A model generated the notes under the pieces. It did not search any database. It was not told where the DNA came from and was given only the letters and a program-made list of their open reading frames with translations. A stretch of DNA of 64,000 nt, taken from positions 166,060-230,059 of IMG/VR virus record IMGVR_UViG_3300023235_000008, one strand, 5' to 3'. The position numbers were made by a program, and so were the translations under genes. Of the stretch, positions 11,976 through 31,568 are shown piece after piece (within the stretch, counting starts at the first letter, position 1; each line of letters starts with the position of its first letter).

Positions 11976-12300
11976 ACCATCAAAGGCAATAATCAAAAAA
12001 GAAGCAGCGTATATGAATACGGTGCTTTTTGCCGACGAAATACCCAAGTTCGATATTACAATAAAATACTTGACAGGCGCTTGGGCATATTGTATAAAGT
12101 ATACAGATAATACATTCGAGATAGAAATGAATAACAGTTTTCCTACGAAAGAGTTATTCGCAAATGTTCTCGGACATGAAATGGTGCACATATATCAAAT
12201 GACAAACGGCGATTCTGGTAATCACAATAGTTTGTTTTATTCGTTCCGTGATGCATTTTCTGAAAATGGATACCAACTGAAAAGAGTTTACAATGAGTAA
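11965..12300 (+). CDS. SprT-like zinc metallopeptidase domain protein
   Basis: HEMVHIYQ (HExxH) plus GNHNSLF. Confidence 0.7.
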   Translation: MTFKPSKAIIKKEAAYMNTVLFADEIPKFDITIKYLTGAWAYCIKYTDNTFEIEMNNSFPTKELFANVLGHEMVHIYQMTNGDSGNHNSLFYSFRDAFSENGYQLKRVYNE

Positions 12301-12691
12301 TACGTTTGGCGTCGATACAAAAGCTGTTATGTCCGGTATGCGCTTTGTTCGTGCATTGAATAGTGCATATGGTCCTGACCGTGGCATGGAAGTTTTTGAT
12401 AAAATCCGTGAAGTGATGGGCGAAGATGTTGCCCGTGCCATTTTCTTTGCACAACTTTCCTCAAATGTTGGCAACGATATTCGTATCACTAATCCCGGTC
12501 GAGAAAAAATCCAACTTATTAAAGAACTTCGCAACACACTCGGGTGTGGATTGAAAGATGCCAAAGATTATAGTGAAGGCACGAATCGTATCTTGGAATC
12601 ATATTACGAAAAATATGTGGATATGGACAAAGTTATCAATATTCTTGAAACAGCCGCCGACAGTTGGGGCGTCGAGTTCGAATACATATAA
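12293..12691 (+). CDS. Protein with ribosomal L7/L12 C-terminal-like domain
   Basis: KIQLIKELRNTLGCGLKDAKDYSE. Confidence 0.6.
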   Translation: MSNTFGVDTKAVMSGMRFVRALNSAYGPDRGMEVFDKIREVMGEDVARAIFFAQLSSNVGNDIRITNPGREKIQLIKELRNTLGCGLKDAKDYSEGTNRILESYYEKYVDMDKVINILETAADSWGVEFEYI

Positions 12692-12697
12692 TAAGCA

Positions 12698-12725
12698 TTG
12701 ACAAACAAAATGATTGGTGTATAAT
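12698..12725 (+). promoter_or_regulatory. sigma70 promoter (leaderless transcript)
   Basis: TTGACA-16-TATAAT; ATG 7 nt downstream. Confidence 0.7.
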
Positions 12726-12731
12726 ACTCCT

Positions 12732-13445
12732 ATGATCAAGTTTACAGACATTCCAAATACAACGTTTAAAGGTTTCCGAGTATTCGGTGACGTGCATGGC
12801 GAGTTCGACGATATGGTTGAAATCGTTACAGGCGCACTTAACGAAGACTTGTTTCCGATTGGACTAGGCGACTTTACTGATCGTGGTCCAGAATCAGACA
12901 AAGTTATGGCTTATGTATTGATGATGGCACGTAACGGTTTGTTCGCCAGCATCATTGGTAACCACGACGACAAGTTGTGGCGGGCTTTGAACGGCAACAA
13001 TGTTAAAATCAACAACGGGTTGGAATTGACATTAGAGCAGTTGAACAACAACGATGACCGTGAAGGCATCGTTAATGAGTGGTTAACTGCAATGCCCAAT
13101 ATGCCATTGTTTGCTACATTTGACAAATATACTTTTGTTCACGGTTCATTTCATCCTGCGATGTTGACGGCTGACGAGTTGGCATACAAAGATAAAAAAG
13201 GATGGGGCAAAGTTGTTTCCCGTGCAATGTATGGTCAAGTTGATGGATTTCAAGAAAACGGTTACCCTAATCGTATCCACGATTGGGTTGATACTATTCC
13301 CGCTGGACATACAGTGTTCGTCGGTCACGAGGTTGTAGGCGATGTGCCAATAACCAAAACAGGTGCCTTGGGTGGCACGGCGCACTTCTTGGACACTGGT
13401 TCGGGCAAGGGCGGTTCAATCTCATTTATGGACGTGGAGTTTTAA
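12732..13445 (+). CDS. Calcineurin-like metallophosphoesterase (Pnkp phosphatase/PrpA/ApaH type)
   Basis: GDVHG, GDFTDRGP, GNHD, FVHG, VFVGH, LDTG motifs. Confidence 0.85.
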   Translation: MIKFTDIPNTTFKGFRVFGDVHGEFDDMVEIVTGALNEDLFPIGLGDFTDRGPESDKVMAYVLMMARNGLFASIIGNHDDKLWRALNGNNVKINNGLELTLEQLNNNDDREGIVNEWLTAMPNMPLFATFDKYTFVHGSFHPAMLTADELAYKDKKGWGKVVSRAMYGQVDGFQENGYPNRIHDWVDTIPAGHTVFVGHEVVGDVPITKTGALGGTAHFLDTGSGKGGSISFMDVEF

Positions 13446-14278: not shown

Positions 14279-15484
14279 ATGAAATATAACTTTCCACATA
14301 TCAATCACATCAATGATGTCCTTCCACATATCGAAGGTCGTAAAGAGTTCGTTGTGGCAGAACGAGATGGATTTACGGTTATCAACTATGTCGTAATGAC
14401 GCCTGACCTGTTCCCACCAGTTGTTACTGAAGCAGATGCAATACTGCGTGAATGTCGTGGCATCACTTTCTGCAATGAAACGGGCAAAGTCGTAGCTCGA
14501 AAGTTTCACAAGTTCTTTAACGTTGGCGAACGCATGGAAACCGAGTTCCGTAAACTGGATTTAAGTCAGCCACACGTTATTCTTGAAAAGCTTGATGGCT
14601 CAATGATTACGCCGTATCTGCGTGATGGTAAAGTTGAATGGCATACCAAAATGGGCAAGACTGATGTTGCCGATATGGTTATTCCTTTCGTTGAAGCAAA
14701 TCCACAGTATGCTGAACTGGCAGATTTCATATTGCGTAATAATAACGCTACGCCAATATTTGAGTTCTGTTCACGCAAGAATCGTGTTGTGATTGACCAT
14801 CCAGAAGACCGTATGGTATTACTGGCGGTGCGTGATAACGTAACTGGAAAGTATTGGGAATACGAGCTTGGTCTTGAAATCCCAGCTGTAGAATTTAATG
14901 TCGAGTTGGTCGGACAGCATAAAGCAACGTTTGACAAGGATTTCCTTGAATATGTTCGTGGCTTGGTCGGAACTGAAGGGTTCGTTGTGCGCTTTGATGA
15001 TGGGCATATGTTGAAAATCAAAGCAGAGGATTACTTACAGTTACATCGTGCCAAAGAAGGTATCTCTCATGAGAAGAATGTTTGGTCAATGGTCCTCAAT
15101 GAGTCAGTAGATGATTTGAAGTCATTCTTAGATGATGATGACCGTATGCGTGTTGAAGATTTTGAAGTGAAGTTATGGCGTGAAGTTGATTACGCTGTTC
15201 AGCACTTGGAAATGTTCTTCGGATTTGCAATGGATGATTTGAACAAGCGTGACCTATCAATGTTTGAAGATGCTGACCGTGAACGTAAGAAGATGTTTGC
15301 CATGGAATACGCTAATAACTACCGTAAAGAGTTCAAAGGTGTCTTGTTCAGCATGTTTGATGGTGGCGATGTGCGTGACTTGGTTATACAGTTCATTAAG
15401 AGCAACGTATCAACTGGAACTAAGTTGGATGGAATACGTCCGTTGTTTAACAACATTCAGTTTGATGAAAGGGAGTATGAATAA
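14279..15484 (+). CDS. rnl1: RNA ligase 1 (T4 Rnl1 family)
   Basis: ECRG, FHKFFNVGE, EKLDGS (motif I), TPIFE, EGFVV, LKIK. Confidence 0.9.
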   Translation: MKYNFPHINHINDVLPHIEGRKEFVVAERDGFTVINYVVMTPDLFPPVVTEADAILRECRGITFCNETGKVVARKFHKFFNVGERMETEFRKLDLSQPHVILEKLDGSMITPYLRDGKVEWHTKMGKTDVADMVIPFVEANPQYAELADFILRNNNATPIFEFCSRKNRVVIDHPEDRMVLLAVRDNVTGKYWEYELGLEIPAVEFNVELVGQHKATFDKDFLEYVRGLVGTEGFVVRFDDGHMLKIKAEDYLQLHRAKEGISHEKNVWSMVLNESVDDLKSFLDDDDRMRVEDFEVKLWREVDYAVQHLEMFFGFAMDDLNKRDLSMFEDADRERKKMFAMEYANNYRKEFKGVLFSMFDGGDVRDLVIQFIKSNVSTGTKLDGIRPLFNNIQFDEREYE

Positions 15485-15996: not shown

Positions 15997-16171
15997 AGAT
16001 CGAGTTCCTACTACTGCACCCTATGGCGGGATAACTGACGGAAGTGTCTACTGTACTCGATGTGGCGAAGAGAGAACAGGGTGCAGTATGTGTGCTGGTG
16101 AACTCAGGAGTTTGAAAGCAGGGCGATCAACCGCCTACAGATTTTGTATAGGAGATGAAAATGCTAAATAA
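15983..16171 (+). CDS. Zinc-finger-like small protein
   Basis: CTRC...CSMC. Confidence 0.5.
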   Translation: MPNNEDRVPTTAPYGGITDGSVYCTRCGEERTGCSMCAGELRSLKAGRSTAYRFCIGDENAK

Positions 16172-16595
16172 ATTGAAAGATGATGCGTTACAAGCGAGGA
16201 AAGATCGTGATCTTTTTGCTAGTTCACTCAACACGCTTTTGTCTGAAGTAAAGATGAGAGCAAAGAACGATGGCAACCGTGAGCCTAACGACGAAGATGT
16301 GTATAAGATAGCACAGACTACAATGGCTTCGTTGCTCGGTAATCGTGACCTATTGGACACTGCAGGACGTGACACGACTGAAGTAGAACAAGAGATGAAA
16401 GTGATTTCTGCTTACGTTCCTACTGTTATGCCGAAGGAAGAAGTCGAAGGTAAAGTTCAACTTGCTATGCATGAAATCAAACCAGAAGGCATGCAAGATA
16501 TGGGCAAAGTGATGTCATGGCTTAAAGAAAAGTATGGAGCTCGTATTGATATGAAACTGGCCTCTCAGCTTTTCCGGGAGCGATTGAATGGATAA
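16161..16595 (+). CDS. yqeY: YqeY/GatB C-terminal domain protein (tRNA-binding fold)
   Basis: LKDDALQARKDRD..LLSEVK..EPNDEDV..EMKVISAYVP..DMGKVM. Confidence 0.85.
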   Translation: MLNKLKDDALQARKDRDLFASSLNTLLSEVKMRAKNDGNREPNDEDVYKIAQTTMASLLGNRDLLDTAGRDTTEVEQEMKVISAYVPTVMPKEEVEGKVQLAMHEIKPEGMQDMGKVMSWLKEKYGARIDMKLASQLFRERLNG

Positions 16596-17108: not shown

Positions 17109-17567
17109 ATGCCTATGTTATATATGCTAATCGGTGTTCCAGCAAGCGGCAAGTCAACTTGGCTTGAACAAAATGCTGATAGTGGTGTAGTTTTAAGCAC
17201 GGACGCACATATTGACAATGTTGCCGCACAACAGGGCAAGTCATATAACGATGTGTTTGGCGATGCGATTAAAAAAGCCACTGTGAAAATGAATAACGAT
17301 TTAAAGCAAGCGGTTAATCGTGGCGAAGATATCCATTGGGATCAAACCAATCTTACGGTTAAATCTCGTCGTGGCAAGCTACAGAAGGTGCCTGATACGT
17401 ATGAAAAGATTGCGGTAGTATTTCCAACACCCGATGCCGACGAACATCAGCGGCGACTGGATTCACGCCCCGGCAAAACTATTCCACCACATATTTTGAA
17501 GAATATGATGGCAACTTTCCAAATGCCTACCACCGATGAAGGATTTGATAGGATAGTAGTAATATGA
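17109..17567 (+). CDS. Polynucleotide kinase-like P-loop protein (AAA_33)
   Basis: GVPASGKST, STD, WDQTN, RR, IP..I. Confidence 0.85.
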   Translation: MPMLYMLIGVPASGKSTWLEQNADSGVVLSTDAHIDNVAAQQGKSYNDVFGDAIKKATVKMNNDLKQAVNRGEDIHWDQTNLTVKSRRGKLQKVPDTYEKIAVVFPTPDADEHQRRLDSRPGKTIPPHILKNMMATFQMPTTDEGFDRIVVI

Positions 17568-19782: not shown

Positions 19783-19915
19783 GGATTGGTAGCTGAGAGG
19801 CACAGCGGCACCTTAATGGGTGTGTCGAAACATAAGCACGTAACAAACTCGCCGAGGACGCTCGAACGATAAGGTTACGCCTGTTACGTTGGTTCAAATC
19901 CAACCCAATCCACCA
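19783..19915 (+). tRNA. tRNA-Leu(TAA)-like RNA with ~60-nt extra arm
   Basis: GGATTGG/CCAATCC-A-CCA, intact D and T arms, irregular anticodon loop. Confidence 0.55.
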
Positions 19916-20937: not shown

Positions 20938-21554
20938 ATGAACACATGTAAAATATGCAATACACAGTTTATCAATAAACCTAAAACAACAGGTCTATAC
21001 TGTTCAATCTCCTGTGGAAATCGCAGTAGAGGAAATAAACTAAGAGAACAAAATAAGACAATCTATGTTCCGTCATCTTGCAAACGCTGCGGTGATGACA
21101 TTCCATATGAAAAAAGACGCAACACATTTTGCTCTAGTAAATGTGCTGCTACAGGAAATACAAACAGAAGGTATCTTCATACATCATATGCAAAGAATGC
21201 AACGAGGCATACAAACCAAGACATTCGGTTTCATACTTTTGTAGCAAGGCATGTGAGATTGAGAATAGGCGAGGGGCTACTGAAAAGAAAATTAAAAAAG
21301 GGGCAGTCAGAGGTCGCCCGACATTAAAAAGATATCTTCTACGAAAGAATGGACACTGCTGTGAAATGTGCAACGGGACGGAATGGATGGGCGAACCTAT
21401 TCCACTCGAACTTGACCATATTAATGGCGATGCGGGTAACAATATGCCCGACAACTTGCGATTATTATGCCCTAACTGCCATACTATAACACCATACTCA
21501 AATGGAAAAAATAGAGGCAATGGTAGAAAATCTCGTGGTGTCCCGCTAAACTAA
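20938..21554 (+). pseudogene. HNH endonuclease with zinc-finger N-terminus, split by a frameshift near 21165-21170
   Basis: ORF 20938 (CxxC/CSxxC) joins ORF 21141 (LELDHINGD..NLRLLCPNCH) if one base is restored. Confidence 0.75.
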
Positions 21555-23546: not shown

Positions 23547-23547
23547 C

Positions 23548-23627
23548 GTCTGTCAATATATAGTTACCTCCACGCGGTGACGGATGGAAAAGTTCGATAT
23601 AATATCGAACCTTACTAAATACTATAT
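23548..23627 (+). ncRNA. HDV-like (theta-type) self-cleaving ribozyme 3' of tRNA-Lys
   Basis: P1 GTCTGTC/GACGGAT (G1.U), P2 ATATAGT/ACTATAT, P3 ACC/GGT, L3 TCCACGC, P1.1 GG, P4 hairpin, J4/2 CTAA. Confidence 0.8.
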
Positions 23628-26110: not shown

Positions 26111-26324
26111 ATACGATATCACCTTCATCAAGGATGGCGTATCCGATGCGAACAATAACGGTGAACGATTTGATTTGTTCACCGTTCAGTTTAATGGCAA
26201 GCCCATTATGCAACGTGTTCCACATCATTTCGCTGTTTGGGCAGTTGCCGCAATGCGTGAGTTCGATCCACGGGATAATCACGATGCCTATCGCAAAGTG
26301 CAATCAGAGTGTCCATATGATTAG
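26097..26324 (+). CDS. Hypothetical protein
   Basis: Coupled ORF MAAGKYDITF. Confidence 0.55.
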   Translation: MAAGKYDITFIKDGVSDANNNGERFDLFTVQFNGKPIMQRVPHHFAVWAVAAMREFDPRDNHDAYRKVQSECPYD

Positions 26325-26591: not shown

Positions 26592-27245
26592 ATGAAATAT
26601 GAAACATTCAATTACTGCTTTCCCGGTCGCCCACGTAAAGCGATTGCCCCAGCATTCCTAAACTTTCACGAAAAGCGTGGATGGGTAGGTCAATACAAAA
26701 AGAATGGAACGTGTAACGTTTTGTTTGTATCGCCTGATAAAGAAGTCACGGCTATGACACGACATAACGATACCCACAAACTTTGGACACCCACAGAAGC
26801 TTCTACTGGACTACTCCGCACAGTACCCGGCAATGGCTGGTGGGTGTTTAATGCCGAACTACTACACAGTAAATCACAGGCTGGACCGACCGATACCAAC
26901 TATCTATTCGATGTTCAAGTCGCCGATGGTGAAGTATTACTAGACAAAACATTTGCTGAACGTATTAAGATTATGGAAGACCTATTCTTGAAAGAGGATT
27001 CCGTCGAAGAATATAGCCATTACGTGGTAGGTGAGCGTGTATGGCTTGCTAAGACCATCACAGAGGGGTTTAAAGACAAATGGGACGAAGCAGATAGAGT
27101 TGCAAAAACACTCGATACTTCGCCTACCGATGAAGGATTGGTGTTGAAAAATCCAAAGGCAGTTTTGAAGCCACCGTTTTCAGCAGATTCAAATGCGGCA
27201 TGGCAAGTCAAATGTCGGGTGGCACACACAAACTATGCATTCTGA
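26592..27245 (+). CDS. Stand-alone ATP-dependent ligase/capping-enzyme nucleotidyltransferase domain
   Basis: QYKKNG (motif I), NAELL, YLFDV, EGLVLK, QVKCR; no OB domain. Confidence 0.75.
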   Translation: MKYETFNYCFPGRPRKAIAPAFLNFHEKRGWVGQYKKNGTCNVLFVSPDKEVTAMTRHNDTHKLWTPTEASTGLLRTVPGNGWWVFNAELLHSKSQAGPTDTNYLFDVQVADGEVLLDKTFAERIKIMEDLFLKEDSVEEYSHYVVGERVWLAKTITEGFKDKWDEADRVAKTLDTSPTDEGLVLKNPKAVLKPPFSADSNAAWQVKCRVAHTNYAF

Positions 27246-27756: not shown

Positions 27757-27923
27757 GCGAGTGTGGTGAAATTGGTAAACACGCCAGATTTATGAGAGTC
27801 TCCGTTATAGGCTCCAATCTACAAGTTAGATTGTTTGGGGAACCGAGAAGGCTAAACCTTCAAAGTTCAAATCAGGTTCTGGTGCCGAAAGGTTTGGAGG
27901 TTCAAGTCCTCTCACTCGTACCA
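27757..27923 (+). tRNA. trnL: tRNA-Leu(TAG) with an 82-nt structured insert in the anticodon (27793-27874)
   Basis: Removing the insert restores CCAGA TT TAG GT TCTGG; the rest is a perfect Leu cloverleaf with A73-CCA. Confidence 0.85.
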
Positions 27924-28508: not shown

Positions 28509-28585
28509 AGTTGCGTAGCATAACTGGCGAATGCCGACTCCTCATAAGAGTTTTTATTCTGGTTCGAATCCAGACGTGACTACCA
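28509..28585 (+). tRNA. trnI: tRNA-Ile2/Met(CAT)
   Basis: AGTTGCG/CGTGACT-A-CCA; CT CAT AA. Confidence 0.8.
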
Positions 28586-28623
28586 AAATAAAAGGCGCAG
28601 GAACACGTTCCATAAATATATGT

Positions 28624-29321
28624 ATGAAAAGTATGTTTGAAGAAAACCCCGTTTATCGGGATGGATGGGAATATGATGATAATATCAAAGCCAATAAAGT
28701 AGTATATGCTATTGGATGCAGTTGGATACATTATAGTTGGTTCACTCGGGTACACGCTCTAAAATATCCAGACACCCTTCTTATCAATAGGTCATTCGGC
28801 GGTCATGGAAATAGTATGATTATAGACACGGTAAAACGTGAATATGATCTAATGCAAAAGTTTGATGATATATATTTTATAGTTTGTTTCTCCGAAGTAG
28901 GTAGAAATATCAAAGACTTTTCATATCAAAATCCAAAAAATTACAACGGTGTTCAAGAATATGAAAAAGCAATACTATACAATCAGATGGAATGCATTGA
29001 TCAGTTTCTCGGCAATGAACAAAGGTTTATAACAACCAGTTTCGTCAGTAATCCATATAATAATAATAAGCGTATTATTGACTTCTGTGAAAAGACATAT
29101 GATCAACCATGCGAAAGTTATACAGCTGCACCGGTGCATTCGAATACCTCAAAGATAGAAATAAGGTGTTCGATTTTGATTTGAATACATTAAGCAACGA
29201 CTTAGAGGATTGTATTAAATATATCGATTGGATGAATAGCCACAAACACATAGAAAATAATCACGCATTTGGATTCACGCCATATGAAAGTTTTATAGAT
29301 TATTTTTATCATGATAAATAA
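28624..29321 (+). pseudogene. SGNH-hydrolase-like gene split by a frameshift near 29115-29120
   Basis: AIGCSW and NRSFGGHGN blocks; continues in the frame of ORF 29109-29321. Confidence 0.5.
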
Positions 29322-29413
29322 TAATACACCTTGAACGGACCCGTAATGTTGGATGGGCCGCGCCCCTTGAGGTTTTCTAAGGCTCAATCGCCAACACGAA
29401 AGAGTTACAAAAT

Positions 29414-29512
29414 GCCCCTATAGCTGAGTGGTTTAGCAAGGGTTTTGTCAAGTACATCCGAGGGTGTATTTGAAAAACCCTAGACCGGAGTTCGATTCTT
29501 CGTGGGGGCACC
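29414..29512 (+). tRNA. trnT: tRNA-Thr(TGT) with a 25-nt hairpin insert (29449-29473)
   Basis: AGGGT TT TGT [CAAGTACATC-CGAG-GGTGTATTTG-A] AA ACCCT; GCCCCTA/TGGGGGC-A-CCA. Confidence 0.85.
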
Positions 29513-29527
29513 ATTCCTAAAATATTA

Positions 29528-29596: not shown

Positions 29597-29664
29597 GATT
29601 GATAATATTGACTACCTCCACGTGGTATCAATCGGAAACTACAGAAATGTAGGCTAAATGTCAA
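29597..29664 (+). ncRNA. HDV-like (theta-type) ribozyme starting right after the tRNA-Ala discriminator
   Basis: P1 GATTGAT/ATCAATC, P2 TTGAC/GTCAA, P3 ACC/GGT, L3 TCCACGT, GG, P4 CTACA-GAAA-TGTAG, J4/2 GCTAA. Confidence 0.85.
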
Positions 29665-29674
29665 AAAGAATAAA

Positions 29675-29830
29675 GGGTCTTTAGCTCAGTTGGTAGAGCA
29701 TCTCGCTTATGTGAGACTTCCTATAGTCTCCGGTCTATTGTTAGACCGTCATTGGTATACTGCGAAGGGAAATCTTCAAAGTTAATGAACATCGAGAATG
29801 TCGGCGGTTCAAACCCGTCAAGACCCACCA
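29675..29830 (+). tRNA. trnV: tRNA-Val(TAC) with an 80-nt structured insert in the anticodon (29710-29789)
   Basis: Removing the insert restores TCTCG CT TAC AT CGAGA; GGGTCTT/AAGACCC-A-CCA. Confidence 0.85.
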
Positions 29831-30044: not shown

Positions 30045-31175
30045 ATGATCATAGACGATGTGCCACGTGGATATACTGTCAACAATAAACTATTTTTCAA
30101 CCGCCATTTAGCTCACATTGAGCAAATGACGAATGGAGGGCTACTTGAGTTTAATATGTTTGATGACGCTTTCAGCAAATATAATTGGAAAATAGACCCT
30201 ACATTATCATTTGAGGAATTGATAGATATCCGAGCACACCAAATCAGAGAAACCAATGATGTGGTTGTGTTATGGTTTAGTGGTGGTACAGATAGTCTCA
30301 CGATGTATAATGCATTTATTCGCAACAATTTACACATTGATGAAATCATTGTTAGGTATTGGCCGATAGCTGGTCATTTTGGTATCGACAAATCAATTAT
30401 CGACTGGCTTTATGAACATCATCCTGACAAAAAAACTACTATAACGACGATTGACCAAACAGATAAGACTGTTCTATCATCCAATTTATACACAGATGAA
30501 TGGACATTATTGAATATGGGATTTGCTAAACATTTGAACGCTGCTGTAGTTTGGGGAACAGACGCCCTTAGTAAAAAATATGAAAACAGGAAATGGGTAC
30601 AAGTACATGGTTTCGAAAAACCACACTTGGTATACCGTAATGAAAAATTCTCTGCTTGGCATTTGGACCTTCCTTATCAATCAACTTTAGGTCACGAAAA
30701 TATGGAATACTTTTTCATAAGTCCTGAATTACCAGAACTACATATAAAGCAGTGCCATCTGCTAAAGAATCATTTAGTAGATAACCTATCGCATACATTA
30801 CATGAGGATTTTAGGTCAGAAAAACTATTTGAAACTACTGACCAGTCATCGTATATGAACTTATCAGTTCATGGGTGTGGCAGACACGGTGAAATACATC
30901 ATAAAATATGTGTTAGTGAGAAATCACTAATAAGGTCTAAAAAAGTTATATTTTCAAAGACAGAAAATTACAATGATTTGAAATTCACTGGATACCAATC
31001 TATACTTCACGCCAGCGCCAATAATATTGATAATATGAAGCATTGGTACAATGGCAGACTTGAGCTTATCAAATCCCCTGTGATGAAATATATGCTGGAT
31101 AGAAACCTAGTGACAAATAAAGACGACCCATTCAGTTTCGTCGGGATGTATTCCAAACAGTACGATCTAGAATGA
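30045..31175 (+). CDS. PP-loop (adenine nucleotide alpha-hydrolase-like) protein
   Basis: VVLWFSGGTDS; YFFISPELPELHIKQCH. Confidence 0.7.
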   Translation: MIIDDVPRGYTVNNKLFFNRHLAHIEQMTNGGLLEFNMFDDAFSKYNWKIDPTLSFEELIDIRAHQIRETNDVVVLWFSGGTDSLTMYNAFIRNNLHIDEIIVRYWPIAGHFGIDKSIIDWLYEHHPDKKTTITTIDQTDKTVLSSNLYTDEWTLLNMGFAKHLNAAVVWGTDALSKKYENRKWVQVHGFEKPHLVYRNEKFSAWHLDLPYQSTLGHENMEYFFISPELPELHIKQCHLLKNHLVDNLSHTLHEDFRSEKLFETTDQSSYMNLSVHGCGRHGEIHHKICVSEKSLIRSKKVIFSKTENYNDLKFTGYQSILHASANNIDNMKHWYNGRLELIKSPVMKYMLDRNLVTNKDDPFSFVGMYSKQYDLE

Positions 31176-31449: not shown

Positions 31450-31568
31450 GGGTGCGTGGTGGAATTGGTATACACGCCAGACTTTTCAGTAAGGCTTTCG
31501 GAAACGAGAGTTTTACAAAAAATCTGGTGCCTTATGGATTGCGGGTTCGAGTCCCGCCGCACCCACCA
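31450..31568 (+). tRNA. trnL: tRNA-Leu(TAA) with a 34-nt hairpin insert (about 31485-31518)
   Basis: CCAGA CT T[TTCA-GTAAGGCTTTCG-GAAA-CGAGAGTTTTAC-AA]AA AA TCTGG; perfect Leu body. Confidence 0.8.

What the first reader, a model, noticed from the sequence alone, without database searches (positions are those of the whole stretch)
29414..29512. tRNA-Thr(TGT) interrupted by a perfect 10-bp hairpin after position 36
Seen: a 25-nt insert unrelated in sequence to the 80-nt family and at a different register (36/37). A pure hairpin is too small to be a self-splicing RNA, so removal would need proteins. This supports an enzymatic route.
Basis: partly seen in the sequence, partly recalled or inferred. 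Interest (0 to 1): 0.7.

Follow-up and report, generated by a model that had tools for sequence, protein, structure and literature searches.

The report
Hairpin intron in phage tRNA-Thr
A T4-like giant phage from a salt lake carries a threonine tRNA gene split by a 26-base hairpin right after the anticodon; related phages lack the insert, no known self-splicing RNA or archaeal splice motif is present, and whether and how it is removed is still untested.

Summary
Window 29414-29513 is a good tRNA-Thr(UGU) gene with CCA encoded. It carries a 26-nt insert (29449-29474), not 25, exactly between anticodon base 36 and base 37. Alignment to intronless orthologues in related phage contigs fixes both boundaries. 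The insert forms a 10-bp hairpin (two G·U pairs, CGAG loop) and turns the anticodon arm into a rod of about 19 bp that buries the anticodon.

It is one of four clearly interrupted tRNAs in this cluster: Thr, Val and two Leu, the cluster's only decoders for those amino acids. All four inserts can be placed at the single U|A step of the anticodon loop. Both hairpin inserts fold only in the sense RNA.

No bulge-helix-bulge motif, group I core, known ribozyme, splicing endonuclease, RtcB or RNase III was found in the 230-kb record (about 65% complete). A T4 Rnl1-type RNA ligase, a Pnkp-type phosphoesterase and a P-loop kinase lie 12-17 kb upstream of the gene (4-7 kb from the start of the cluster).

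My best reading (0.45) is a protein-spliced intervening sequence resealed by the phage ligase. The main rival (0.3) is a recently inactivated gene. No RNA data exist. The nearest precedent is the "enigmatic" tRNA introns of Lak megaphages.

The parts
29414..29513 (+). tRNA-Thr(UGU) gene with encoded CCA. The 5' exon is 29414-29448 and the 3' exon is 29475-29513.
   Evidence: Rfam RF00005 scores 49.7 bits. All four stems are intact. An orthologue without the insert exists.
29449..29474 (+). 26-nt intervening sequence CAAGTACATCCGAGGGTGTATTTGAA between nt 36 and nt 37.
   Evidence: The boundaries are fixed by alignment to L008 and L010. It is single-copy in the genome.
29449..29472 (+). Hairpin with arms 29449-29458 and 29463-29472 (10 bp, 2 G·U) and loop CGAG at 29459-29462. 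The excised piece would carry a 2-nt 3' AA tail (29473-29474).
   Evidence: Folds. The sense strand folds at -11.1 kcal/mol and the antisense at -3.1 kcal/mol.
29439..29481 (+). Extended anticodon arm. 29439-29446 pairs with 29474-29481 and U36 (29448) pairs with A29473. G35 (29447) is bulged. Together with the hairpin this makes a rod of about 19 bp.
   Evidence: MFE structure, -22.6 kcal/mol for the arm alone.
31450..31568 (+). tRNA-Leu(UAA) with a second hairpin-type insert, 31485-31518 (34 nt, 12-bp stem with 3 G·U, GAAA loop), at U34|A35.
   Evidence: The intronless Leu(UAA) in L009-L012 is seen.
29675..29830 (+). tRNA-Val(UAC) with an 80-nt insert (29709-29788 if placed at U34|A35).
   Evidence: Rfam 55.2 bits. 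Intronless Val-like contigs read GCTTTACACGC across the gap.
27757..27923 (+). tRNA-Leu(UAG) with an 82-nt insert of the same family (27792-27873 if placed at U34|A35).
   Evidence: Intronless Leu(UAG)-like contigs are seen.
14279..15484 (+). T4 Rnl1-type RNA ligase, the candidate sealing enzyme.
   Evidence: PF09511 scores 102 bits. T4 Rnl1 structure 2c5u matches at E 5.7e-24.
12714..13445 (+). Calcineurin-like metallophosphoesterase, a candidate 2',3'-phosphate end healer.
   Evidence: PF00149 E 7e-12. Best solved relative is 4j6o at E 5.6e-17. From memory only, 4j6o is the phosphatase domain of bacterial Pnkp.
17109..17567 (+). Stand-alone P-loop kinase (AAA_33), a candidate 5'-OH polynucleotide kinase.
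   Evidence: PF13671 E 3.8e-17. No solved relative was found by sequence.

Best explanation
The 26-nt hairpin is a genuine intervening sequence, apparently gained since the split from its intronless relatives, in the tRNA-Thr(UGU) gene of a T4-like jumbo phage of a bacterium. In the transcript it stacks on the anticodon stem. U32-U34 and U36 pair with the A-run, G35 is bulged, and the result is a rod of about 19 bp that hides the anticodon. The precursor therefore cannot decode. I infer that the insert is removed by proteins. Two endonucleolytic cuts, after U36 and before A37, would release a 10-bp hairpin with a 2-nt 3' tail. The exon ends would then be sealed in the anticodon loop by the phage's own Rnl1-type ligase. 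[quoted passage not shown] The cutting enzyme is unidentified. For this insert the geometry fits a host RNase III-class double-strand nuclease, whose 5'-P and 3'-OH ends Rnl1 can join directly. Shown: the interrupted gene, its exact boundaries, the sense-specific RNA structure, intronless orthologues, intact exons, and the presence of the ligase and healing genes. Inferred: that excision happens, where the cuts fall, and which enzymes act.
For: The exons are a fully intact tRNA with Thr features G1-C72, C2-G71, G35 and U36. Removing 29449-29474 recreates exactly the TTTGTAA loop of the orthologue. The cluster holds about 28 tRNAs and covers almost all amino acids. Thr, Val and Leu are represented only by interrupted genes. 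ACA is the phage's commonest Thr codon, at 37%. All four inserts lie inside the anticodon loop and fit its single U|A step. By my estimate, chance gives roughly 1e-3 for that. Both hairpin inserts fold only as sense RNA: -11.1 and -15.2 kcal/mol against -3.1 and -4.3 antisense. Their 5 imperfect pairs are all G·U and there are no mismatches. That argues for selection on the transcript rather than on a DNA palindrome. Rnl1, a Pnkp-like phosphoesterase and a P-loop kinase are encoded 12-17 kb upstream of the Thr gene. The excised piece would have the 2-nt 3' overhang typical of RNase III products, on a rod of about 19 bp. The form is stable across samples.
Against: There are no RNA data, and no RNA run could be listed. 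No nuclease candidate was found. The record lacks RtcB, EndA and RNase III and is only about 65% complete. The second hairpin insert, in Leu(UAA), does not give RNase III geometry at its deduced junctions, so a single simple rule for cutting fails. RNA repair genes are common in jumbo phages as counter-defence (PMC7824862). They could also serve the HDV-like ribozyme ends in this cluster. Only one independent sequence of the insert exists, so there is no covariation test. The compensatory stem differences from L008 are shared with the intronless L022, so they do not date from after the insertion.
Confidence: 0.45

Rival explanations
1. The gene is dead. A small mobile or repair-derived DNA insertion that prefers the T|A step of anticodon-loop DNA recently knocked out this and three other tRNA genes. 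Nothing is spliced, and the host tRNAs do the decoding.
For: Related phages have the same genes uninterrupted, so the inserts are dispensable and probably recent. No splicing nuclease was found. Freestanding homing endonucleases, an HNH and a SegE-like enzyme, are present in the window. A fixed T|A target is also what a site-specific DNA insertion would give.
Against: The insert is single-copy and no target-site duplication is evident at the T|A junctions. The hairpins are much weaker on the other strand, with all 5 imperfections being sense G·U. The exons of all four genes show no decay. Under this reading the phage would have lost every Thr, Val and Leu decoder of an otherwise near-complete set.
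Confidence: 0.3
2. The interrupted transcript has a non-decoding or conditional role. It could be a decoy or sponge for a host anticodon nuclease. It could be a pro-tRNA that is activated only when a nuclease cuts it and the phage ligase reseals it. It could also be a change that protects the gene from a competitor's homing endonuclease.
For: Phage tRNAs are known to counter tRNA-targeting defences through anticodon-loop changes (PMC10264068). Three of the four inserts can sit at 34|35, a known hotspot of anticodon nucleases (my knowledge of RloC, colicin E5 and zymocin). The repair ligase set is present.
Against: This is purely inferential, and no defence or nuclease partner is identified. 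It overlaps with the splicing model in its activated form.
Confidence: 0.12
3. It is an archaeal-type intron cut at a bulge-helix-bulge motif by a splicing endonuclease, and the virus infects a haloarchaeon.
For: The source is a salt lake. The insert is short and lies in the anticodon loop.
Against: No 3-nt bulges or 4-bp central helix can be drawn at these junctions. There is no PF01974 endonuclease. tRNA-Tyr is class II at 88 nt, one CAT tRNA has the C1xA72 initiator mismatch, an L7/L12 domain gene is present and the virion genes are T4-like. All of these point to a bacterial host.
Confidence: 0.02
4. It is a self-splicing or self-cleaving RNA.
For: An HDV-like ribozyme lies 85 nt downstream, so ribozymes are used in this cluster.
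Against: 26 nt with a plain 10-bp stem leaves no room for a catalytic core. No Rfam ribozyme or intron family matches at E <= 1. The intron ends in A, not in the terminal G of group I introns.
Confidence: 0.02

Closest known systems
'Enigmatic' tRNA introns of Lak megaphages (Devoto et al. 2019, PMC6784885)
   Same: These are phage-encoded tRNAs, including a Thr(TGT), interrupted in the anticodon loop. The inserts are present in some related genomes and absent in others. They match no known intron class and their removal is unexplained.
   Different: The Lak introns are longer, and one may itself encode a tRNA. The Lak phages are gut Prevotella phages with an alternative code. Here the insert is a bare 26-nt hairpin in a T4-like salt-lake phage, and there is no sequence similarity.
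Archaeal and eukaryal protein-spliced tRNA introns (BHB motif; EndA/TSEN plus RtcB or Trl1)
   Same: A short insert next to the anticodon pairs with the anticodon loop. Cut, heal and seal logic applies. The phage's kinase, phosphoesterase and Rnl1-type ligase mirror the three activities of fungal Trl1.
   Different: There is no BHB motif. The position is 36/37, not 37/38. No splicing endonuclease gene was found, and the tRNAs are bacterial in type.
T4 Pnkp-Rnl1 repair of anticodon-loop breaks
   Same: The same ligase family is present. It is a T4-like phage and the same place in the tRNA is sealed.
   Different: In T4 a single break made by a host defence nuclease is repaired. Here two breaks would be needed and a piece discarded.
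RNase III-excised intervening sequences of bacterial 23S rRNA (my knowledge)
   Same: An extra helix is inserted into a stable RNA and the excision geometry fits a double-strand nuclease. For the Thr insert this gives a 2-nt 3' overhang.
   Different: rRNA fragments are left unligated. A tRNA would have to be resealed. The Leu(UAA) insert does not fit the geometry.
Group I introns in bacterial tRNA anticodon loops (for example cyanobacterial tRNA-Leu UAA)
   Same: They are bacterial-type tRNA genes interrupted in the anticodon loop, the 5' exon ends in U, and distribution is patchy among relatives.
   Different: Group I introns exceed 200 nt, have a conserved core and end in G. This insert is 26 nt and ends in A. 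There is no Rfam match.

Membership tests
tRNA (the interrupted gene is a real tRNA-Thr) | Cloverleaf with conserved core nucleotides, scoring above the Rfam gathering score. | tested here: met
   49.7 bits against a gathering score of 29. Acceptor 7 bp, D 4 bp, anticodon 5 bp and T 5 bp stems are intact, and GTTCGATTC forms the T loop.
tRNA (the interrupted gene is a real tRNA-Thr) | Thr identity: anticodon UGU plus G1-C72 and C2-G71. | tested here: met
   Read directly from the sequence. The orthologue with loop TTTGTAA is called Thr(tgt) by ARAGORN. That these are the identity elements is from my knowledge of E. coli ThrRS.
Archaeal/eukaryal BHB tRNA intron | Two 3-nt bulges on opposite strands separated by a 4-bp helix, each holding a splice site. 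| tested here: not met
   The arm folds into a continuous helix with one bulged G, and no drawing puts both junctions in 3-nt bulges.
Archaeal/eukaryal BHB tRNA intron | A splicing endonuclease (PF01974) in the virus or host. | tested here: not met
   No match in the 230-kb record while the control genomes ring. The host is unknown but bacterial by its tRNA features.
Group I intron | Conserved P3-P9 core, more than 200 nt, terminal G. | tested here: not met
   26 nt, ends in A, and no Rfam intron match at E <= 1.
Known self-cleaving ribozymes (hammerhead, twister, pistol, hatchet, hairpin, HDV) | Match to the family covariance model. | tested here: not met
   Inside 29414-29513 only the tRNA model matches. 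The HDV-like hit lies outside, at 29598-29665.
Repeated palindromic DNA elements (REP/PATE/MITE-like) | Many copies per genome, a palindrome equally good on both strands, and target-site duplication for cut-and-paste types. | tested here: not met
   A single copy in 230 kb. Sense folds at -11.1 and antisense at -3.1 kcal/mol. No duplication is evident at the junctions. The genome is only about 65% complete.
Phage 'enigmatic' tRNA introns (Lak type) | Phage tRNA interrupted in the anticodon loop, present or absent among related genomes, with no known class. | tested here: met
   This is a descriptive grouping, not a homologous family.
Spliced intron in the functional sense | A mature RNA lacking the insert exists. 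| not testable with these tools
   No RNA run could be listed. The DNA contigs show only the interrupted form.

The most novel reading that the evidence does not exclude
A bacterial virus runs a protein-catalysed tRNA splicing pathway that does not use the bulge-helix-bulge motif. Short hairpin introns sit at the U|A step of the anticodon loop. They are cut out by a double-strand-specific or anticodon-loop nuclease, and the exons are rejoined by the phage's T4 Rnl1-type ligase with kinase and phosphoesterase healing. That would make the classic T4 'tRNA repair' enzymes a true splicing machine.
Probability: 0.3. Interest if true: 0.85.

Novelty: new variant of a known kind. Interest (0 to 1): 0.62.

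Why it matters
In bacteria and their viruses, the only characterised tRNA introns are self-splicing group I introns. Protein-dependent tRNA splicing is regarded as an archaeal and eukaryotic trait. Short unexplained inserts in phage tRNAs were noted once, in Lak megaphages, and never resolved. This locus offers a minimal, experimentally tractable case: a 26-nt hairpin, exact junctions known from an intronless orthologue, three further interrupted tRNAs in the same cluster, and a candidate ligase and healing set in the same genome. If it is spliced, it would show a new route of tRNA maturation in the bacterial world and a new job for Rnl1-type ligases. If it is not spliced, it documents a process that inserts DNA specifically at the T|A step of anticodon loops.

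Tried and rejected
- **Close relatives in GenBank phages:** none were found.
- **Relatives in IMG/VR:** none were found with an exon pattern allowing a 0-30 nt gap or with the neighbouring PP-loop protein.
- **Conserved block upstream of the tRNA:** a 17-nt block gave only chance hits in IMG/VR.
- **Motif of the 80-nt insert family:** a scan of IMG/VR gave only chance hits in coding DNA.
- **217-aa mini-ligase (26592-27245):** I considered it as a splicing ligase because it sits inside the cluster and keeps all the ligase motifs. In 78 IMG/VR loci the family is mostly not next to tRNAs, so it is not evidence.
- **ORF 28531-29184:** this gene just upstream is SGNH-hydrolase-like, not a nuclease.
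- **ARAGORN intron mode:** it mis-assigns this gene as Asp(gtc) with a 3-nt intron and produces many false chimeras, so it was used only as a pointer.
- **RNase III geometry as a general rule:** it fits Thr but fails for Leu(UAA).
- **RNase P or RNase Z cutting of a minihelix-like hairpin:** the 5' site fits for Thr, but the 3' site is one base off, and it fails for Leu. I did not pursue it.
- **Compensatory stem changes against L008 as proof of post-insertion selection:** rejected, because the intronless L022 shares the same D and T arms.
- **RNA evidence:** none was listed.
- **An intronless allele within this phage population:** none was seen in contigs of eight runs. Contigs can miss rare variants.

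Full report
**What is there**

The window is the last 64 kb of a 230-kb IMG/VR virus record, estimated about 65% complete, from salt-lake metagenomes. Between about 19.2 and 31.6 kb it carries roughly 28 tRNA genes, all on the + strand.

Rfam's tRNA model matches 29414-29510 at 49.7 bits, with about 26 extra bases in the anticodon loop. CCA follows at 29511-29513. Read directly, the gene has:
- a 7-bp acceptor stem with G1-C72 and C2-G71;
- a 4-bp D stem;
- the anticodon stem AGGGT/ACCCT;
- a 5-bp T stem with GTTCGATTC;
- the loop TTTGT, then 26 nt, then AA.

**Exact boundaries**

Related phage contigs were reached through a neighbouring gene. They carry a syntenic tRNA-Thr(UGU) without any insert (L008:2216-2291, L010:28-103), behind the same conserved element of about 85 nt. 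The alignment places the insert at 29449-29474, between T36 and A37. The boundary cannot slide, because the flanking letters differ. So the insert is 26 nt, not 25, and the predicted mature loop TTTGTAA is exactly the relative's loop.

A scan of JGI metagenomes for the acceptor ends with a variable gap gave these results:
- The interrupted form occurs only in the source contig and in L025. L025 is the same phage from another sample, identical over the alignment apart from one 170-bp indel and a 1-nt gap.
- Several intronless homologues were found.
- One of them, L022, has the same D and T arms as the window's gene.

In contigs of eight DNA runs the interrupted form appears with zero differences, and no copy of this phage lacks the insert. 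The relative's intronless Thr sequence appears in run X5, which also holds this phage (table 5c).

**Structure**

The insert forms a 10-bp hairpin: 29449-29458 with 29463-29472, two G·U pairs, loop CGAG. It stacks on an extended anticodon stem. U36 pairs with A29473, U32-U34 pair with the A-run, and G35 is bulged. The result is a rod of about 19 bp.

The fold is far better than shuffles. For the whole precursor z = -5.2, with 0 of 200 shuffles as good. For the insert alone z = -5.0, with 1 of 3000 as good.

The fold is strand-specific, at -11.1 kcal/mol sense against -3.1 antisense. The second hairpin insert in tRNA-Leu(UAA) behaves the same way, at -15.2 against -4.3. Across the two stems all five imperfect pairs are G·U in the sense RNA and there are no mismatches. 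This points to selection on the transcript rather than on a DNA palindrome.

**Context: not an isolated oddity**

Four tRNAs in the cluster are clearly interrupted inside the anticodon loop:

| tRNA | Gene | Insert | Insert coordinates |
|---|---|---|---|
| Thr(UGU) | 29414-29513 | 26-nt hairpin | 29449-29474 |
| Leu(UAA) | 31450-31568 | 34-nt hairpin | 31485-31518 |
| Val(UAC) | 29675-29830 | 80 nt | 29709-29788 |
| Leu(UAG) | 27757-27923 | 82 nt | 27792-27873 |

The Val and Leu(UAG) inserts belong to one family. The anticodons are supported by intronless counterparts in the relatives and by other organisms' contigs that bridge the gaps. A fifth tRNA-like gene (19783-19915) has 57 extra bases, probably in the variable region, and a 6-nt loop.

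Thr, Val and Leu are represented in the cluster only by the interrupted genes. ACA is the phage's commonest Thr codon.

Each of the four mature loops contains exactly one U|A step, and every insert sits at it or can be placed at it. For Thr this is 36|37 and for the others 34|35, with 35|36 equally possible for two of them. With 8 possible junctions per loop, I estimate a chance coincidence at about 1e-3.

**Who the host is**

- tRNA-Tyr is class II, at 88 nt.
- One CAT tRNA has the C1xA72 mismatch of bacterial initiators.
- tRNA-Ala has G3·U70.
- An L7/L12 domain gene and a YqeY gene are present.
- The virion genes are T4-like: gp23, gp20, gp25, gp53 and the prohead protease. A SegE-like endonuclease and an intein are also present.

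This is a T4-like jumbo phage of a bacterium, not a haloarchaeal virus.

**What it is not**

No bulge-helix-bulge motif can be drawn at the junctions, and there is no splicing endonuclease gene. The insert is far too small for a group I or II intron and ends in A. Rfam finds no intron or ribozyme inside the gene. It has no other copy in the genome.

**What could remove it**

The record lacks RtcB, Rnl2 and RNase III. It does encode the following upstream of the tRNA cluster, 12-17 kb from the Thr gene:
- a T4 Rnl1-type RNA ligase at 14279-15484 (PF09511 at 102 bits; T4 Rnl1 structure at E 5.7e-24);
- a calcineurin-like phosphoesterase at 12714-13445, whose best solved relative is 4j6o (E 5.6e-17). 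From memory, 4j6o is the phosphatase domain of bacterial Pnkp;
- a stand-alone AAA_33 kinase at 17109-17567.

These are the three activities of a heal-and-seal tRNA ligase.

If the junctions deduced from the orthologue are the cut sites, the released piece is a 10-bp hairpin with a 2-nt 3' tail, and the exon product keeps the anticodon as a 3' overhang. That is the stagger of an RNase III-class enzyme, which nearly all bacteria have (my knowledge). Its 5'-P and 3'-OH ends could be joined by Rnl1 without healing.

There are three caveats:
- The Leu(UAA) hairpin insert gives the opposite stagger at its deduced junctions.
- The two 80-nt inserts share no junction structure.
- Repair enzymes are widespread in jumbo phages (PMC7824862). 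They could equally process the 2',3'-cyclic ends left by the HDV-like ribozyme that follows tRNA-Ala.

**Verdict**

No RNA run could be listed.

- **Protein-dependent splicing sealed by the phage ligase: 0.45.** The nuclease is unknown, and host RNase III is the best single guess for this insert.
- **A recently inactivated gene: 0.30.**
- **A decoy or conditional pro-tRNA role: 0.12.**
- **Archaeal-type splicing or self-splicing: about 0.02 each.**

The nearest precedent is the unexplained tRNA introns of Lak megaphages (PMC6784885). Against that background this is a new, minimal variant. Among about 100 tRNAs in 78 other large-phage loci, I found only one clearly interrupted gene (L063). This cluster, with four or five, is unusually rich.

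Noticed in passing
window 29598-29665 (+): There is an HDV-like ribozyme match (RF02682, 41.5 bits, gathering score 44) starting two bases after the discriminator of tRNA-Ala(UGC), which lacks an encoded CCA. It looks like the tRNA-3'-end-processing 'theta' ribozymes of gut phages. A weaker candidate follows tRNA-Lys at 23547-23626 (drz-agam-1, 28.9 bits).
   Followed up: partly
window 29329-29413 (+); L008:2132-2215: An element of about 85 nt directly upstream of tRNA-Thr is conserved at about 85% with the relative, more than the flanks. It has a predicted two-domain fold and two pairs changed on both sides. It matches no Rfam family. It could be a processing or regulatory RNA.
   Followed up: partly
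window 27757-27923 and 29675-29830 (+): The 80-82-nt inserts in tRNA-Leu(UAG) and tRNA-Val(UAC) form one family, with shared TATAG and GAAGG-loop-CTTCAAAGTT blocks and three hairpins. They have no Rfam match and no relatives in IMG/VR by motif scan.
   Followed up: partly
window 19783-19915 (+): This tRNA-like gene scores 40.8 bits in Rfam. It has a 6-nt anticodon loop (TTAATG) and about 57 extra structured bases after the anticodon stem. ARAGORN's Arg call is unreliable.
   Followed up: partly
window 26592-27245 (+): This is a 217-aa ligase-like protein with the adenylyltransferase domain only and all nucleotidyl-transferase motifs (KKNG, EGLVLK, KCR). It is a member of a large family of about 210-aa proteins on big phage contigs. 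It is mostly not linked to tRNAs and its substrate is unknown.
   Followed up: partly
window 30045-31175 (+): This 376-aa protein has a PP-loop motif (SGGTDS) and sits inside the tRNA cluster. It has only a weak PHROG match to PAPS reductase, and its homologues are all unnamed. It may be a tRNA-modifying enzyme.
   Followed up: partly
window 26123-26292: This 170-bp stretch is absent from the otherwise identical contig L025 from another sample and is flanked by a short direct repeat (ATCAC). It is either a deletion variant in the population or an assembly difference.
   Followed up: partly
window 20938-21554 (+): An HNH endonuclease ORF (21141-21554) overlaps a zinc-finger-rich ORF (20938-21327) in another frame. 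It is probably a freestanding homing endonuclease inside the tRNA cluster, perhaps frameshifted.
   Followed up: no
L063:11280-11413 (-): A tRNA in an unrelated 181-kb IMG/VR phage scores 54.9 bits in Rfam and is interrupted by about 62 nt in the anticodon loop. The insert contains a T-arm-like hairpin, which recalls the Lak 'tRNA within intron'.
   Followed up: partly
window 12293-12691 and 16155-16595 (+): The phage encodes a ribosomal L7/L12 C-terminal domain protein and a YqeY-like protein next to the RNA repair genes.
   Followed up: no
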